Below, piece after piece: positions 10,851 to 41,450 of a stretch of 41,450 nt of DNA (positions within the stretch are counted from its first letter, which is position 1; every line of letters starts with the position of its first letter). Made by a program: the position numbers and the translations under genes. This DNA comes from Octopus bimaculoides (taxonomy: Eukaryota), in contig NC_069001.1 in NCBI RefSeq assembly GCF_001194135.2, forward strand, positions 31,390,624-31,432,073. Direction: 5' to 3'. The notes beneath the pieces were generated by a model. It saw only the letters and a list, made by a program, of their open reading frames with translations. It made no database searches and was not told the origin of the DNA.

Positions 10851-11309
10851 TCAGCTAATAGCGGAGATGCTCTGCCCGTGCCAATTTTGTGGGGCAGTGC
10901 GTGTGATTTGGAGGAAGGTAATTTTGTCCTTCCTGTTATACAACAGGGCAGCTATCACCTCCCTTGCTTCAATTTCTGGTGGTACGTCGTTCATTTTGAC
11001 GCGTGCTGTTCTCCTTCCCATGTAGGTTGGGATCAGCACCACCTCCTTCGTTTTCAGGGGACCCACTGAGTGCTCTTGGGCTTTTTCGGCCGTCTCAAAT
11101 CTGGCCTTTATCGTTCCATATTCCCTACCCCTCGCTATGTACTTTATGTCTTTCCGTATAGGGGCCAGGTATTTTTCTATTTCGCACGTTTCGAAGTGTT
11201 TGATTTTTTTCGATGAAAGATAGTACGTTTTGTAAACGACTGTCCTCCTCTTCATATTTTCAACACTAGGGGAGGGTGAGATCTTTATATCTCCACCCTC
11301 CTCTTTCAT
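10851..11309 (-). pseudogene. N-terminal half of a LINE ORF1-like (RRM-RRM, L1/Tx1-type) RNA-binding protein, 3'-truncated
   Basis: Non-repetitive open frame (ATG 11309; open from 11381). YGTIKARFETAEKAQEH resembles RRM RNP1 plus helix 2; ARVKMNDVPPEIEAREVIAAL resembles the start of a second RRM as in CCHC-type ORF1 proteins. Confidence 0.7.
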
Positions 11310-11488
11310 TCTTTCAAAAAGCTCGGAGAGCTTCTCAGTTTGTATTATCACGTTTTCACATGATAGAGCGGCTACTGCCAAAATCTTTTTTACTGGCTAA
11401 TCCAGCGGTTTTGCTTGATGAATTATTTCAACCGACGTACCCGGTCGAAATTAATTCTTACACACAATAATTTTCAATTCTTTTCCCT

Positions 11489-13310: not shown

Positions 13311-13545
13311 GCGGTGAGTTGGCAGAAACGTTAGCACGCCGGACGAAATGCTTAGCCTATTGGTATTTCGTCTGTCTTTACGTTCTGAGTTCTAACTCCG
13401 CCTAGGTCGACTTTGCCTTTCATCCTTTCGGGGTCGATTAAATGAGTACCAGTTACGCTCTGGGGTCGATGGAATCGACTTAAATCCCTTGTCTGTCCTT
13501 GTTTGTCCCCTCTATGTTTAGCCCCTTGTGGGCAATAAAGAAATA
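13311..13545 (+). mobile_element. SINE type A, full length, alternative 3' tail
   Basis: GCGGTGAGTTGGCAGAAACGTTAGCACGCCGGACG...TTCTGAGTTCTAACTCCGCC...GTCGACTTTGCCTTTCATCCTTTCGGGGTCG; tail TTGTTTGTCCCCTCTATGTTTAGCCCCTTGTGGGCAATAAAGAAATA. Confidence 0.9.
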
Positions 13546-23049: not shown

Positions 23050-23162
23050 ACTTACAACATAACCTCTCCCCCTGGACAGGACACCAGTGCGTTACAGGGT
23101 TGTTACTCGTTTACGGCTGAGTGGACTGGGGCGATGTGAAATGAAACGTTTTGCCCAAGAAG
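23050..23162 (-). mobile_element. SINE type E fragment (CORE-like block plus tail start)
   Basis: Minus strand TTCTTGGGCAAAACGTTTCATTTCACATCGCCCCAGTCCACTCAGCCG...CTGGTGTCCTGTCCAGGGG. Confidence 0.75.
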
Positions 23163-23169
23163 TGAATGT

Positions 23170-23700
23170 TGTGATGATGACGCTGATGATGATGATGATC
23201 ATGATGATGATGATGATCATGATAATGAAGACGACGCTGATGATGATGATAACAATTCTGATGAATGAAGAGGAGGAAGAGAAAGGAGAGGACGCCGCCG
23301 CCGCCGACGACGACAACGATGACAATGGTGATCATGATGATGGTGAAGCTGACGACGATAAAGATGACGGTGATAATGTTGATGAGAGCAATTCTGATGA
23401 ATGAAGATGAAGCAGAGAAAGGAGAGGATGCCCACGACAACAGCGATGACAATGATGAACATGATGATGATGACGACGATAATGATGACGGTGATGATAA
23501 TGACAACGACAGTGATGATGATGATGATGATGATGATAACAGTTCTGATCAGGAGGAGGAGGAGGAAGAGAAGGGAGGGGATGCCGACGACAACAAAAAT
23601 GATGATGATGATGATATTGATGATAATGTTGATGATGATGACGGGGAGGAAGAAGACACCGCTGACGACGAGAACGGCGGCGCTGACGATAATAACGTCT
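23170..23700. repeat. GAT/GAC/GAG trinucleotide field with about 140-150-bp higher-order repeat
   Basis: CA(A/G)TTCTGAT...GAG...GAGAA(A/G)GGAG(A/G)GGA(C/T)GCC block at about 23253, 23390 and 23540. Confidence 0.85.
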
Positions 23701-37072: not shown

Positions 37073-39054
37073 AGTTATGNNNNNNNNNNTGTGTGTGTGT
37101 GTACAGTTATGAATGTGTATATTTATATATATATAAACCTATGTGCAAATATATATATATATATATATATAATTTGTCCGGGTTATGTACATGTGTAAAT
37201 GTAGATTACAGACATACGTACACACACACACACACACACATAAACACACATTCGTGCAGATATATAAGCATGCGCACATGTAGGATGGAGAGGAAACAGA
37301 GACCGAAAATGAATAAACGTACACATAATATGTGAACATACGCACACAAGATACATAAGCACACACATACGCGTACACACATACATACATATTTTTATAT
37401 ATCCTACTAAACAGTAATTAGGAATGCATGAGTGTTCCTTTATATGGGTCAATGCAATATGCATATTATATATGTATATGTATAAGTATATACATATATA
37501 TATAATTTGTATGTATGTATGTATAAAGGCTCGTATATGTATACAGCGTATGACTGATTAATGTGTCTATGTAATATACTGAGAGACGAATAAAGGGAAA
37601 ATAAAGAGAAAGAAAAGCAACATGACGGACATCTCTCTATTGATTTATACACTCGCACACACACACACACACACTCACACACACAAACACACACACGCAC
37701 GTGCGCATGTATACACATGTACATATGGACGTCTATATGTGTGTATGTATGTATGTGTGTGCATGTGTTTGTGTATGCATAGACACGAATACACAAATGT
37801 AAACATACATAATATGCACGCACACACATATACACATCCAAGCAGCTATATATATATGTATGTATATGTATATATATATATATCCATATGTATATATATA
37901 TATATATATATATATGCATATGTATATATAGATGCATATGTATATATATATATGCATATGTGTATATATATATGTATGTATATATGCATATGTGTATATA
38001 TATATGTATGTATATATGCATATGTGTATATATATATGTATGTATATATGTATATATATATATATNNNNNNNNNNNNNNNNNNNNNNNNNNNNNNNNNNN
38101 NNNNNNNNNNNNNNNNNNNNNNNNNNNNNNNNNNNNNNNNNNNNNNNNNNNNNNNNNNNNNNNNNNNNNNNNNNNNNNNNNNNNNNNNNNNNNNNNNNNN
38201 NNNNNNNNNNNNNNNNNNNNNNNNNNNNNNNNNNNNNNNNNNNNNNNNNNNNNNNNNNNNNNNNNNNNNNNNNNNNNNNNNNNNNNNNNNNNNNNNNNNN
38301 NNNNNNNNNNNNNNNNNNNNNNNNNNNNNNNNNNNNNNNNNNNNNNNNNNNNNNNNNNNNNNNNNNNNNNNNNNNNNNNNNNNNNNNNNNNNNNNNNNNN
38401 NNNNNNNNNNNNNNNNNNNNNNNNNNNNNNNNNNNNNNNNNNNNNNNNNNNNNNNNNNNNNNNNNNNNNNNNNNNNNNNNNNNNNNNNNNNNNNNNNNNN
38501 NNNNNNNNNNNNNNNNNNNNNNNNNNNNNNNNNNNNNNNNNNNNNNNNNNNNNNNNNNNNNNNNNNNNNNNNNNNNNNNNNNNNNNNNNNNNNNNNNNNN
38601 NNNNNNNNNNNNNNNNNNNNNNNNNNNNNNNNNNNNNNNNNNNNNNNNNNNNNNNNNNNNNNNNNNNNNNNNNNNNNNNNNNNNNNNNNNNNNNNNNNNN
38701 NNNNNNNNNNNNNNNNNNNNNNNNNNNNNNNNNNNNNNNNNNNNNNNNNNNNNNNNNNNNNNNNNNNNNNNNNNNNNNNNNNNNNNNNNNNNNNNNNNNN
38801 NNNNNNNNNNNNNNNNNNNNNNNNNNNNNNNNNNNNNNNNNNNNNNNNNNNNNNNNNNNNNNNNNNNNNNNNNNNNNNNNNNNNNNNNNNNNNNNNNNNN
38901 NNNNNNNNNNNNNNNNNNNNNNNNNNNNNNNNNNNNNNNNNNNNNNNNNNNNNNNNNNNNNNNNNNNNNNNNNNNNNNNNNNNNNNNNNNNNNNNNNNNN
39001 NNNNNNNNNNNNNNNNNNNNNNNNNNNNNNNNNNNNNNNNNNNNNNNNNNNNNN

Positions 39055-39109
39055 CGCACCGACCAAAGCCTTGTGAGTGGATCTCGCAAACGGAAACTGA
39101 AATAGCCCG

Positions 39110-39142
<33 letters not shown>

Positions 39143-39185
39143 GGTGCAGGTGTGGCTGTGTAATAAGAAATTTGCTTCTCAGCCA
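39055..39185 (+). mobile_element. SINE type B middle fragment plus a second truncated head
   Basis: CCGACCAAAGCCTTGTGAGTGGATCTCG...GAAACTGAAATAGCCCG; then GGTGCAGGTGTGGCTGTGTAATAAGAAATTTGCTTC. Confidence 0.75.
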
Positions 39186-39289
39186 ACCAGCCAACAAGTC
39201 TTGTTAGCCCGCTCAACGTGGGTACCTGATTGGTTCTTATTTTATCGATCCTAGGAAGGATGGCAACGTCACCTCAGACCTAAAAATTA

Positions 39290-39540
39290 AACTAAGAAGT
39301 ACCGACTCGTGCCCTAGGACTCATATGGCCTATCATCCAGTTTCCACGGCGTATAAGGGACCGAAATCACAAAATAACTGCTGAACGGGACACCAGTCCA
39401 TCGTAGAGTTACTTCATTTACACCAGTGTGGACTAGAGCAACGTGAAATAAAGTGTTTTGCTCAAGAACACGACGCATCGCCCGGTTCAGGAATCGAAAC
39501 CACAATCTTGCGATCGCCCTAACCACTAGGCAGCATGCCC
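39290..39540 (-). mobile_element. SINE type E, full length
   Basis: Minus strand CTAGTGGTTAGGGCGATCGCAAGATTGTGGTTTCGATTCC...TTCTTGAGCAAAACACT...GATGGACTGGTGTCCCGTTC...GGAAACTGG...ATGAGTCCTAG. Confidence 0.85.
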
Positions 39541-39728
39541 TCCTTAAACCGAGAAGGTAAACGTACTAAATACCACAAGGTGTTTTGTCTTACTCTATTA
39601 GCCACCTCTCTCCTCGTGTTTATTCATTTGTCACCATATCTCTGTTGGTGTACACTGTCTGTCTTTCAAGTTATCTTGAAAACAAGGAAGAATTTAGTGA
39701 AATAACTGCCATTATTAAACTAGCGTTT

Positions 39729-39906
39729 AAGGCGGTGAGCTGGCAGAATCATTAGCACGCCAGACGAAATGTTTAGCGCTGTTTCGTCTGCCGCTACGTT
39801 CTGGGTTCAAATTCCACCTAGGTCGACTTTGCCTTTCATCCTTTCAGAGTCGATTAAATAAGTACCGGTTACGCACTATAGTCGATGTAATCGATTAGAT
39901 CGACCC
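39729..39906 (+). mobile_element. SINE type A, tail lost at a gap
   Basis: AAGGCGGTGAGCTGGCAGAATCATTAGCACGCC...TTCTGGGTTCAAATTCCACC...GTCGACTTTGCCTTTCATCC. Confidence 0.9.
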
Positions 39907-40029
39907 TAGTACGNNNNNNNNNNAACGCAACAAACATAAAATCGGGGAACTAAAAATTACAAAAAGTGAATGATAATAGTAGAAGAAAAATTAAAATAAA
40001 ATGATAATATACAAGAATGAAAAAATGAG

Positions 40030-40790
40030 GCGCAATGTCCACTCGATCCCCGAAGTCGGGTGGTTACATTTATCCAGTTTTTTTCACTTTTACTTAAACA
40101 TCATGTATACATTTTAATAGTTTTGCAACTCAAAAAGCTGAAACACTCGTGTTATTTTTCTCCCATTAATCATTGTTACTTCCGTCTTTATCAACTGTAA
40201 ATAATCAGTTCTAGTGGGGGTGGTGTTTCCACCAACCATACCCTTTTCGTTGTTACATTTTCACCAAGTTCTTTTATGTAATCCCAGTAGTTTTCCTCTT
40301 GTATTAAAATGCATTTCTCAGCACAGGTTTCCGGCATTTTCACTCTTATTATTTCTTCGCGATTTTTCTGTCCATCTGCTCGTTCTTCTCGTATTTTATT
40401 AAAACCCCCTTGTATTTAGCATATTTATTCGTTCTCTCTTCCTCCTCTTGTACATTATTAGTTTCTGGCTTTCCTGACTTATTTTTCTTTCGCATTTTAG
40501 GGTTAGTAGCCCCATCTTCGTTTTTCTCCTTTGTTTCTTCTGTTTCACACTTCTGTCTCCCTTTCATTTCCTCGGTGCGGTCTACAATGTTTTCCTCCTC
40601 TGCTTGTGTTTTCTCTTGCTGTGGCTGTGTGAACTCATATAGGGGGCATTCGGTCTTCATATGACCTCTCTCCCCGCATATGTAACGATTTGGTTTTCTT
40701 CCCTCGACTACAACATTTAACGTTCTCTCGTCCTCCACTTCTATCTGGTAGGGAATTCTTTCTATGTCGTAGTTGTAATTGCTGTTGTTC
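40030..40790 (-). pseudogene. C-terminal half of a LINE ORF1-like protein (CCHC knuckle, charged tail) plus about 160-bp 3' UTR; no ORF2 follows
   Basis: IPYQIEVEDERTLNVVVEGRKPNRYICGERGHMKTECP: CX2CX4HX4C at 40646-40687 with the first Cys codon read as CGT. One frameshift near 40405 continues IREERADG...VWLVETPPPLELIIYS* (stop 40191-40193). GC-rich stem-loop at about 40030-40060. Confidence 0.75.
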
Positions 40791-41450
40791 TTCTTTACAA
40801 CAGATCTACCTCGATGCAACATACCTCTGATCAAAGGCGTTATATCCATGACTGTCCCACCTTTCCTTCAGACATAAACACATCTAGGACTACAATTACC
40901 GATGTGTCCTTCAATTTATTTATCGTTTTTTACCCTGAGTATGATTTGACTGCTATTTCAACCAAGGTGTAAATTGTAATGAAAGACAATTTAACTGTTA
41001 TTGCTAACAGTTCGAGCGACCAGCCAGAAGACCTATCGCTATTTCTACACAGTCTTAGTTTCCATATCATTTTCGACTCGGAAAATATTGTTCAACCGTA
41101 CGTTCTGTCAAGTCAACTCCTGATGGGTGCTTGATATATTTTCCCCCTGATTGCAACTGTTTCGTTTCCTTTGCGCTTCTGATGCTCCATGAGAAATTCA
41201 AGGGCATTACAGAATCTCGCGGTAATATATTTTTATGCCTTTGTCCACAATTAAGGAATCGATATTTTGGAAATGTTTCAGAAGTAAAATAGTTCGAGAA
41301 TAACACGTTGCGTTTATTTGCTTTATATATTTTAAGCTATTTAAATGGCAGCTTCGATTTCTTCAGATAAAAATACAGTAACACACATGCATGCATTTAT
41401 ATGTGTGTGTGTGTGTGTGCCTATGCGTATATATATATATATATATATAT

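What the first reader, a model, noticed from the sequence alone, without database searches (positions are those of the whole stretch)
40030..40790. Candidate ORF1-only ('half-LINE') retroposon: zinc-knuckle ORF ends in a short UTR with no endonuclease/RT
Seen: a CCHC knuckle in VVVEGRKP context, a charged tail, one frameshift, a stop at 40191, then about 160 bp of UTR ending in a GC-rich hairpin (CCACCCGACTTCGGGGATCGAGTGG) and unrelated AT-rich DNA. Known: in autonomous L1/Tx1-type LINEs ORF2 begins at or just after the ORF1 stop; ORF1-only derivatives exist (e.g. mammalian HAL1). Inference: a non-autonomous family that encodes its own RNA chaperone and borrows RT in trans. I know of no such family described in octopods.
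Basis: partly seen in the sequence, partly recalled or inferred. Interest (0 to 1): 0.8.

Follow-up and report, generated by a model that had tools for sequence, protein, structure and literature searches.

The report
Octopus ORF1-only "half-LINE" retroposon copy
This is a broken, 5'-truncated copy of a roughly 100-copy octopus mobile element that carries only the first (RNA-binding) gene of a LINE and no reverse transcriptase; its relatives share their 3' tail with a complete LINE and with the genome's commonest SINE, so it most likely borrows that LINE's enzyme to copy itself.

Summary

**What is in the window**
- Window 40768..39924 (minus strand) is a 5'-truncated, decayed copy of a dispersed, transcribed repeat family of order 100 copies.
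- The family has one ORF of about 430 aa: N-terminal region, RRM-like domain, CCHC knuckle, K/E-rich linker and C-terminal region. A 3' UTR of about 260 nt follows.
- No copy examined has an endonuclease/RT gene.

- This copy has two frameshifts, not one, plus an in-frame deletion and a Cys-to-Arg change in the knuckle.
- The family stop codon is at 40116-40114, not 40191.
- The "unrelated AT-rich DNA" after the hairpin is still element 3' UTR, cut by a 10-N assembly gap.
- The ATG at 40849 lies in flanking DNA.

**Evidence from related copies**
- A second O. bimaculoides copy and two O. vulgaris copies (1.94 kb each) have the same ORF1-then-UTR plan.
- Next to the O. vulgaris copies sits an autonomous L1/Tx1-like LINE. 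Its ORF1 is homologous, and its last 58 nt match the ORF1-only tail at 54 positions.
- The same tail ends the genome's hyper-abundant SINE.
- dN/dS between two copies is 0.25.

**Limits and novelty**
- Trans-mobilisation is inferred, not shown, and no target-site duplication could be read.
- Precedents exist (mammalian HAL1, Drosophila HeT-A), so this is a new member of a known kind.

The parts
39924..40768 (-). The copy itself. It is a 5'-truncated, decayed member of the ORF1-only retroposon family. Its 3' end is cut by the assembly gap, and about 75-80 nt of tail are missing.
   Evidence: blastn to L001 gives 84.3% over 885 columns, window 40768..39924.
40114..40768 (-). ORF1 remnant, corresponding to residues ~202-430 of the ~430-aa family ORF. 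It is read in three frames because of two private frameshifts.
   Evidence: tblastn with the family ORF gives three collinear pieces at 75-81% identity.
40646..40687 (-). CCHC zinc knuckle, with the first Cys mutated to Arg in this copy (R-YI-C-GERG-H-MKTE-C).
   Evidence: Pfam zf-CCHC scores 21.1 bits. Family reads carry TGT at 40687-40685. Intact knuckles in P0008 (22.0 bits) and the O. vulgaris unit (25.3 bits) are.
40441..40630 (-). K/E-rich charged linker. This copy lacks about 11 codons (KERSTENKKEI) at 40472-40475.
   Evidence: Translation is and the alignment. Reads carry a 35-39 nt insert at 40472.
40117..40440 (-). C-terminal region of the ORF (KYKGVLIKY...VWLVETPPPRTDYLQLIKTEV...ELQNY). 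It is conserved with the O. vulgaris ORF1-only units. It holds the two frameshifts of this copy: a 7-bp deletion at 40354 and a 2-bp insertion at ~40214-40218.
   Evidence: blastp gives 32% over 62 aa, E 1e-6.
40114..40116 (-). Family stop codon (TAA).
   Evidence: The position matches that in L001 and P0004.
39924..40113 (-). The 3' UTR as far as the assembly holds it.
   Evidence: It aligns with the L001 3' UTR. Depth is above background. Contigs run on beyond 39924 with the L001-like sequence TTGTACCGTTTTTATGTTTTGTGATG.
40039..40063 (-). Imperfect hairpin CCACCCGACTTCGGGGATCGAGTGG, about 50 nt after the stop. It lies in the only 3'-UTR stretch that still matches between the two species at DNA level.
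   Evidence: The surrounding ~90 nt are 74-76% identical to the O. vulgaris units. Folding gives -10.8 kcal/mol (z -0.44) here and -17.3 (z -3.3) in O. vulgaris unit 2.
40769..40849 (-). Not part of the element. This is flanking DNA that happens to extend the reading frame back to an ATG (MDITPLIRGMLHRGRSVVKKNNSNYNY).
   Evidence: Depth falls to background. Family reads diverge from the window at 40768.
39914..39923 (.). A 10-N assembly gap that hides the 3' tail of the element, and the tail of the neighbouring SINE.
39732..39913 (+). A copy of the genome's hyper-abundant SINE, pointing tail-first into the same gap, so tail-to-tail with the element.
   Evidence: blastn to the complete SINE at 13311-13486 gives 83%. 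Depth is >1e4. The loose-end consensus CTTAATCCCTTTGTCTGTCCTTGTTTGTCC is the start of the SINE tail.

Best explanation
The window holds a dead, 5'-truncated copy of a non-autonomous retroposon family that keeps only the ORF1 gene of an L1/Tx1-like LINE.

- A full-length element is about 1.7-1.9 kb.
  - It has a short 5' UTR and one ORF of about 430-510 aa.
  - The ORF runs N-terminal region, RRM-like domain, CCHC knuckle, K/E-rich linker, C-terminal region.
  - A 3' UTR of about 260-290 nt follows, holding a hairpin and a specific, non-poly(A) 3' tail.
- Shown:
  - the one-gene plan without ORF2 in four copies from two species;
  - homology of the ORF to the ORF1 of an autonomous APE+RT LINE;
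  - a near-identical 3' tail in that LINE, the ORF1-only elements and the dominant SINE;
  - purifying selection on the ORF;
  - transcription of the family;
  - 5' truncation of this copy.
- Inferred:
  - The element's RNA is translated into its own ORF1 protein, which coats the RNA.
  - The partner LINE's ORF2 protein recognises the shared 3' tail and copies the RNA into the genome by target-primed reverse transcription.
  - That process often stops short, which would explain the truncation at 40768.
For: **Family and copy number**
- Seven O. bimaculoides homologues at 53-81% identity, and more.
- Raw-read depth is 30-160 over the element against 0-3.6 over the flank.
- Contig k-mer depth over the hairpin is 50-106 times that of single-copy contigs.

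**No ORF2**
- In L001 the ORF stop is followed by about 260 nt of UTR and then a SINE.
- O. vulgaris units L002 7339-9288 and 9279-11213 each hold one ORF plus a UTR.
- tblastn with the LINE ORF2 finds nothing in the window, or in L001 apart from ORF1.
- Read consensus links the UTR to the ORF end.

**Autonomous relative**
- L002 11848-15982 encodes ORF1, Exo_endo_phos (2e-13), RVT_1 (3e-29) and zf-RVT (4e-9).
- L004 4058-7456 is an intact 1132-aa ORF2. Its best solved-structure match is human LINE-1 ORF2p, 2.5e-71.
- In L003 ORF2 starts 9 nt after the ORF1 stop.

**ORF1 homology**
- 36-42% identity.

**Shared tail**
- ORF1-only unit against LINE: 54/58 nt.
- SINE tail against LINE tail: 43/50.
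- SINE tail against the O. bimaculoides ORF1-only tail: 29/36, with 0 of 2000 shuffles scoring as well.

**Selection, transcription, truncation, lineage**
- dN/dS is 0.25 over 213 codons, binomial p 3.6e-7.
- 114-190 RNA reads per run lie on the element and none on the flank. They carry the unbroken family version at the frameshift sites.
- 62-75 DNA reads per run continue as ORF1 beyond 40768, with agreement 0.82-0.91.
- O. bimaculoides and O. vulgaris ORF1-only ORFs form a 100%-bootstrap clade, apart from the LINE-linked ORF1s.
Against: - No target-site duplication could be read. The 3' end of the window copy and the 5' end of L001 both lie in assembly gaps.
- No fully intact copy was recovered.
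- Only four genomic copies were seen as DNA. The rest is inferred from short reads.
- The partner LINE was found in O. vulgaris and O. sinensis, not in the window's own species.
- The partner's ORF1 is only about 40% identical. An unsampled autonomous LINE with a closer ORF1 may therefore exist.
- The two O. vulgaris units are tandem, and the LINE itself forms 99%-identical tandem arrays. Some amplification of these elements is therefore at the DNA level.
- The raw DNA runs are Hi-C-like and biased towards GATC sites, including the hairpin. Copy number is therefore rough.
- The RRM fold is only weakly supported: AF2 mean pLDDT 53, Foldseek E 0.04.
Confidence: 0.78

Rival explanations
1. The family is a deletion derivative of the LINE that spread mainly by DNA-level tandem or segmental duplication, not by retroposition.
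For: - The O. vulgaris units are head-to-tail neighbours, 96% identical, and abut a LINE.
- The LINE and an APE/RT-deleted derivative form arrays with 99-99.8% identical units.
- No target-site duplication or poly(A) was seen.
Against: - The window copy is solitary. It is truncated at a private point (40768) and has a low-copy flank.
- L001 holds one copy only.
- Gene models of the family sit on different chromosome-scale records.
- Copies differ by 5-15%, with dN/dS 0.25. That pattern fits descent from active master copies.
Confidence: 0.1
2. It is a host gene family domesticated from a LINE ORF1 (in the manner of L1TD1), and the window holds one of its pseudogenes.
For: - RefSeq and UniProt gene models exist.
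- RNA is present.
- dN/dS is below 1.
- The lineage is shared by two species.
Against: - There are about 100 copies, and those seen carry frameshifts.
- This copy is 5' truncated.
- The conserved 3' UTR ends in the same tail as a LINE and a SINE, which a host gene has no reason to keep.
- Several gene models are evident chimeras. P0010 is spliced to an exon 21 kb away, and P0009 starts in a microsatellite.
Confidence: 0.07
3. This is simply a truncated copy of an autonomous LINE that lost ORF2 at this locus only.
For: Only part of the 3' end is visible, because of the gap at 39914-39923.
Against: - The junction from ORF stop to UTR to hairpin is the same in L001 and in the O. vulgaris units.
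- It is also the consensus of the family reads.
- In the autonomous relative, ORF2 starts 9 nt after, or overlaps, the ORF1 stop.
Confidence: 0.03

Closest known systems
HAL1 ('half-L1') of mammals (Smit 1999; Bao & Jurka 2010, as cited in PMC5753468)
   Same: It is a non-autonomous derivative of a LINE that encodes only ORF1p and is thought to use the parent LINE's ORF2p. The ORF is kept under selection in source copies.
   Different: - HAL1 derives from vertebrate L1, whose ORF1p has a coiled coil, an RRM and a CTD, and it ends in poly(A).
- The octopus ORF has a CCHC knuckle, a long K/E linker and a different C-terminal region.
- The octopus element ends in a specific 3' tail of about 60 nt shared with its LINE and a SINE. 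This points to tail-specific ('stringent') recognition.
HeT-A with TART/TAHRE of Drosophila telomeres (PMC4467039)
   Same: - HeT-A is a Gag/ORF1-only non-LTR element with CCHC knuckles (the knuckles are from my own knowledge) that lacks pol and is proposed to use another element's Pol.
- Head-to-tail arrays mix the Gag-only element and the autonomous element. The order unit, unit, LINE is seen in L002.
   Different: - The octopus arrays lie 8-40 Mb from the ends of chromosome-scale records, so they are not telomeric.
- The O. bimaculoides copies seen are solitary and dispersed.
- The autonomous partner is closest to L1 ORF2p among solved structures, not a Jockey-clade element (the clade of HeT-A is from my own knowledge).
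SINE/LINE pairs with a common 3' tail (Ohshima & Okada 2005, cited in PMC4824008)
   Same: Mobilisation is inferred from a 3' tail shared with an autonomous LINE. The same tail is carried here by the abundant SINE at window 13313-13545.
   Different: The element is protein-coding, about 1.9 kb long, and has no tRNA-like head (one search finds no tRNA in 39000-40000).
ORF1 proteins of L1/Tx1-, CR1- and Jockey-type LINEs with RRM plus CCHC ('type II' ORF1p, Khazina & Weichenrieder 2009; from my own knowledge)
   Same: An RRM-like domain is followed directly by ...VEGRKP-C-x2-C-x4-H-x4-C. A homologue sits upstream of APE/RT in L002, L003 and L004.
   Different: There is a single knuckle, an unusually long charged linker, and a C-terminal region of about 100 aa with no Pfam match.

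Membership tests
ORF1-only non-autonomous LINE derivative ('half-LINE' kind) | The ORF is homologous to the ORF1 of an autonomous LINE. | tested here: met
   The family ORF is 36-42% identical to the ORF1 that precedes APE/RT in L002, L003 and L004. The profile search recovers both groups.
ORF1-only non-autonomous LINE derivative ('half-LINE' kind) | ORF2 (endonuclease/RT) is absent as a property of the family, not of one copy. | tested here: met
   Four copies in two species go ORF stop, 3' UTR, end. tblastn finds no ORF2 hit. Read consensus agrees. Only four copies were seen as assembled DNA.
ORF1-only non-autonomous LINE derivative ('half-LINE' kind) | The 3' end is shared with the autonomous partner. 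| tested here: met
   In O. vulgaris, 54/58 terminal nt are shared between unit and LINE. In the window's species only indirect evidence exists: the L001 tail is 29/36 identical to the SINE tail, which itself matches the LINE tail at 43/50. The window copy's own tail lies in the gap.
ORF1-only non-autonomous LINE derivative ('half-LINE' kind) | Hallmarks of retroposition: dispersed copies, 5' truncation and target-site duplications. | tested here: inconclusive
   Dispersal and a private 5' truncation are shown. Target-site duplications cannot be read because both informative ends lie in gaps.
ORF1-only non-autonomous LINE derivative ('half-LINE' kind) | Mobilised in trans by the partner's ORF2 protein. 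| not testable with these tools
   This needs a retrotransposition assay.
HAL1 proper (mammalian L1-derived) | L1-type ORF1p (coiled coil, RRM, CTD) and a poly(A) tail. | tested here: not met
   The ORF has a CCHC knuckle. The 3' end is a specific non-poly(A) tail. The element works like HAL1 but is not a member.
RRM + CCHC ('type II') LINE ORF1p | CCHC zinc knuckle. | tested here: met
   Pfam zf-CCHC is above the cut-off in P0008 (22.0 bits) and the O. vulgaris unit (25.3 bits). The window copy scores 21.1 bits with the first Cys lost.
RRM + CCHC ('type II') LINE ORF1p | RRM fold upstream of the knuckle. | tested here: inconclusive
   The AF2 model has a beta-alpha-beta-beta-alpha-beta unit at residues 135-215 with pLDDT 74-87, but the mean is 53. 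The best Foldseek match is the TAP/NXF1 RNA-binding domain at E 0.04, and nothing scores below 0.001. There is no Pfam RRM hit.
L1/Tx1-like autonomous LINE (the proposed partner, L002/L003/L004) | APE endonuclease, RT and a C-terminal zinc-binding region in one ORF2, preceded by ORF1. | tested here: met
   Pfam finds Exo_endo_phos, RVT_1 and zf-RVT. Intact 1132-1133-aa ORF2s are present. Human L1 ORF2p matches at 2.5e-71 against 1e-24 for R2. Assignment to L1 versus Tx1 was not resolved.
HeT-A/TART-type telomeric retrotransposon system | Head-to-tail arrays at chromosome ends. | tested here: not met
   Arrays exist, but at 39 of 128 Mb, 32 of 40 Mb and 77 of 110 Mb of their records.

The most novel reading that the evidence does not exclude
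The ORF1-only lineage may be old and self-sustaining. It would predate the split of O. bimaculoides and O. vulgaris, since their ORF1-only ORFs form a 100%-bootstrap clade at only about 47% amino-acid identity. It has kept its own ORF1 under selection throughout. Together with an L1/Tx1-like LINE and the genome's dominant SINE it would form a three-tier system using one 3' tail, with members also building mixed head-to-tail arrays. That would be a HeT-A/TART-like division of labour, in a mollusc and away from telomeres.
Probability: 0.3. Interest if true: 0.65.

Novelty: new member of a known kind. Interest (0 to 1): 0.5.

Why it matters
**Why ORF1-only elements are informative**
- They are rare natural experiments on what ORF1 proteins do. 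The element survives only if its own ORF1 protein helps its RNA capture a foreign reverse transcriptase.
- A CCHC-type example outside mammals and flies, with an identifiable partner LINE and a SINE on the same tail, gives three substrates for one enzyme: coding with ORF2, coding without ORF2, and non-coding.
- That makes cis-preference and tail recognition directly testable.

**Relevance to octopus genomes**
- Their SINE expansion is a noted feature, and the tail match points to the LINE that probably drove it.
- It also flags mis-annotated "genes" (CCHC-type domain-containing proteins) that are really pieces of transposable elements.
- My literature searches found RTE and Dong LINEs described in octopus, but no ORF1-only element.

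Tried and rejected
**Hypotheses tested and dropped**
- **C-terminal region as a remnant of the LINE endonuclease.** An apparent match around DRKIAK gave p 0.001 with the L001 copy. It vanished with the family consensus (p 0.65), so it is chance.
- **C-terminal region homologous to that of other octopod ORF1s, including the LINE's.**
  - By eye there is a shared pattern (CILIREENYWEYIKELDENV against WILIEKEEHKKLKEAFPTDI).
  - An HMM test was not significant.
  - hhalign gave E 0.27.
  - This stays inconclusive.
- **The hairpin as an exceptionally stable structure.** It is not in this copy (z -0.44). Only O. vulgaris unit 2 stands out (z -3.3).
- **'TTCCAGTCT' at the L002 junctions as a target-site duplication.** The same 16 nt follow both unit 2 and the LINE, so it may belong to the elements or be a preferred target. 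This is unresolved.

**Tool steps that gave little or failed**
- The repeat finder on the whole window returned only microsatellite noise.
- A local blast found no second copy of the element in the window.
- The look-up of encoding contigs had no record for P0001, P0008 or the window ORF.
- The structure prediction was poor overall, and the fold search gave nothing below E 0.001.
- Raw DNA runs X19-X21 turned out to be Hi-C-like, with a linker and GATC bias. Depth gives copy number only to an order of magnitude.
- A fuzzy-regex scan timed out and was replaced by blastn-short.

Full report
**The sequence.** The finding lies on the minus strand.
- The mechanical ORF 40849..40349 (166 aa) reads MDITPL...IPYQIEVEDERTLNVVVEGRKPNRYICGERGHMKTECPLYEF..., followed by a K/E-rich stretch.
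- Pfam zf-CCHC matches at 21.1 bits (cut-off 20.8). Only profile positions 4-17 align, because the first Cys is Arg here.
- The window is a draft scaffold with 14 runs of N. One 10-N run at 39914-39923 lies just 3' of the finding.
- No second copy of this element is in the window.

**It is a repeat family.**
- A protein search returned seven Octopus bimaculoides proteins at 53-81% identity. Further searches added P0008 (453 aa), P0009 and relatives in O. vulgaris and O. sinensis.
- Taken together, they define an ORF of about 430 aa: N-terminal region, RRM-like region, CCHC knuckle, K/E linker, and a C-terminal region ending ...VWLVETPPPRTDYLQLIKTEVTMINGRKITRIFQFLELQNC.
- Raw DNA reads of the same organism lie 30-160 deep over 39947-40793, against 0-3.6 over 40871-41400.
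- Contig k-mer depth of the hairpin segment is 50-106 times that of a neighbouring single-copy contig.
- The raw runs are Hi-C-like and biased to GATC sites, so I say only "of order 100 copies".

**What is private to this copy.**
- Family reads continue beyond 40768 as ORF1. The loose-end consensus translates ...FEMWLFATFE, with 62-75 reads per run and agreement 0.82-0.91.
- The copy is therefore 5' truncated at 40768. The ATG at 40849 is flank.
- Relative to the family it has:
  - a Cys-to-Arg change at 40687;
  - a 7-bp deletion at 40354;
  - a 2-bp insertion near 40214-40218;
  - an in-frame deletion of about 33-39 nt at 40472.
- Read through these lesions, the ORF ends at TAA 40116-40114, as in L001 and P0004. 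The "stop at 40191" is an artefact of the second frameshift.

**The 3' side.**
- A second genomic copy, L001 (O. bimaculoides CM046624.1), aligns with the window from 40768 to 39924 at 84%. The alignment runs through the hairpin and the AT-rich stretch, right up to the gap.
- In L001 the 3' UTR runs about 260 nt beyond the stop and then meets a SINE.
- Contigs that match the window's UTR continue past 39924 with the L001-like sequence.
- The element therefore does not end at 40030. About 75-80 nt of its tail are hidden in the gap.
- The hairpin (40063-40039) has two C·A mismatches and is not unusually stable here: -10.8 kcal/mol, z -0.44. It lies in the only 3'-UTR stretch that still matches between species at DNA level (74-76%). 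It is a perfect 11-bp stem in O. vulgaris unit 2: -17.3 kcal/mol, z -3.3.

**No ORF2, and an autonomous relative.**
- Neither the window nor L001 holds anything like the related LINE's endonuclease/RT.
- In O. vulgaris (L002) two units of 1.94 kb, 96% identical, each carry one ORF of about 510 aa with the same plan, the hairpin and a 3' tail. Neither has ORF2.
- Directly after them lies an autonomous LINE. It has an ORF1 with the RRM-like region and knuckle, then Exo_endo_phos, RVT_1 and zf-RVT.
- Intact copies of this LINE occur in L004 (ORF2 of 1132 aa) and L003.
- Among solved structures its ORF2 is closest to human LINE-1 ORF2p: 2.5e-71, against 1e-24 for R2. I did not resolve L1 versus Tx1.
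- In the LINE, ORF2 starts 9 nt after, or overlaps, the ORF1 stop. That is exactly what the ORF1-only elements lack.
- The family ORF is 36-42% identical to the LINE's ORF1.
- In a neighbour-joining tree the O. bimaculoides and O. vulgaris ORF1-only ORFs form a 100%-bootstrap clade, apart from the LINE-linked ORF1s.

**The shared tail.**
- The last 58 nt of the O. vulgaris ORF1-only unit match the LINE's 3' end at 54 positions.
- The upstream UTR is not clearly alignable, although both carry a GCTCG...CGAG stem at the same place.
- The same tail ends the hyper-abundant SINE of the window's genome (full copy at 13313-13545). It matches the LINE tail at 43/50. It matches the O. bimaculoides ORF1-only tail in L001 at 29/36, and none of 2000 shuffles scored as well.
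- One 3' tail therefore serves a LINE, a SINE and the ORF1-only element. This is the pattern expected if one reverse transcriptase recognises all three.

**Selection and expression.**
- Between the window copy and L001, dN/dS is 0.25 (213 codons, 35 synonymous and 45 non-synonymous differences, binomial p 3.6e-7). Most of their divergence therefore arose while the ORF was under constraint.
- RNA-seq reads cover the element (114-190 reads per run) and none cover the flank.
- Nearly all RNA reads are 90-99% alike and carry the unbroken family version at the frameshift sites. Other copies, not this one, are transcribed.

**Protein.**
- The AlphaFold model of P0008 is poor overall (pLDDT 53). Residues 135-215 form a beta-alpha-beta-beta-alpha-beta unit at pLDDT 74-87.
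- The best fold match is the TAP/NXF1 RNA-binding domain at E 0.04. This is weak support for an RRM-like domain.
- The C-terminal region is conserved between the two species' ORF1-only elements (32% over 62 aa). It has no Pfam match. Its relation to the C-terminus of other ORF1s is unproven.
- A full HMMER scan found 1049 relatives at E ≤ 0.001. Seven of the ten I looked up carried a name, and all seven are octopod, including Argonauta.

**Interpretation.** The evidence fits an ORF1-only, non-autonomous derivative of an L1/Tx1-like LINE, mobilised through a shared 3' tail. Trans-mobilisation, chaperone activity and the promoter are inferred.

The main caveats are:
- no target-site duplication was read;
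- no intact copy was recovered;
- the partner LINE was not sampled in the window's species;
- related elements also amplify as tandem arrays, with units 99-99.8% identical.

**Comparison with known elements.**
- Mammalian HAL1 encodes only ORF1p (PMC5753468).
- Drosophila HeT-A lacks pol and is thought to use TART Pol (PMC4467039).
- The octopus family works like these. It is not HAL1 (different ORF1 type, no poly(A)), and it is not telomeric.
- My searches of the octopus literature found RTE and Dong LINEs described, and no ORF1-only element.

Noticed in passing
window 13313-13545 (+) and 39732-39913 (+): The genome's hyper-abundant SINE (depth >1e4 in a ~0.7x read sample) ends in ...TTGTTTGTCCCCTCTATGTTTAGCCCCTTGTGGGCAATAAAGAAATA. 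This is the same 3' tail as the L1/Tx1-like LINE of L002/L003/L004, so that LINE is a candidate partner for the octopus SINE expansion.
   Followed up: partly
window 39732-39924 around the gap 39914-39923: The SINE (+) and the ORF1-only copy (-) point tail-to-tail into the 10-N gap. Two similar tails in inverted orientation may be why the assembly broke there.
   Followed up: no
window 10851-11381 (-): A second, divergent ORF1-like fragment of 176 aa covers the N-terminal region and the RRM-like part, without a knuckle. It is 38% identical to the family and groups with the LINE-side ORF1 clade. SINE fragments follow it.
   Followed up: partly
L004 2445-17026 and L003 2508-17353: The autonomous LINE forms head-to-tail tandem arrays. 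The period is 5.28 kb in O. vulgaris, with intact ORF1 and ORF2. In O. sinensis a 3.57-kb derivative that lacks most of the APE and the start of the RT is arrayed. Units are 99-99.8% identical.
   Followed up: partly
L002 7339-16250: The order is unit, unit, LINE, all on one strand. The motif ATTCCAGTCT recurs before unit 1, at both junctions and after the LINE. This may be a target preference, part of the element ends, or recombination between duplications.
   Followed up: partly
window 39978-40031: Summed contig k-mer depth here is 7-10 times that of the ORF part in four runs, but raw reads show no such excess. The cause may be low-complexity k-mers or a segment shared with another repeat. 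This is unexplained.
   Followed up: no
proteins P0009, P0010, P0100: Public gene models fuse pieces of this ORF1 to unrelated sequence. One has a microsatellite-encoded N-terminus, one an exon 21 kb away, and one a 1041-aa host-like protein. These look like annotation chimeras.
   Followed up: no
runs X19-X21: The DNA runs labelled 'GENOMIC OTHER' carry the palindromic linker AGGTTCGTCCATCGATCGATGGACGAACCT at read breaks, so they are proximity-ligation libraries. Depth from them is biased towards GATC sites.
   Followed up: yes
window 23141-23663 and 1076-1374: Long runs of GAT/GAC-rich triplets, which would encode poly-Asp/Glu if translated, were seen in the repeat listing.
   Followed up: no
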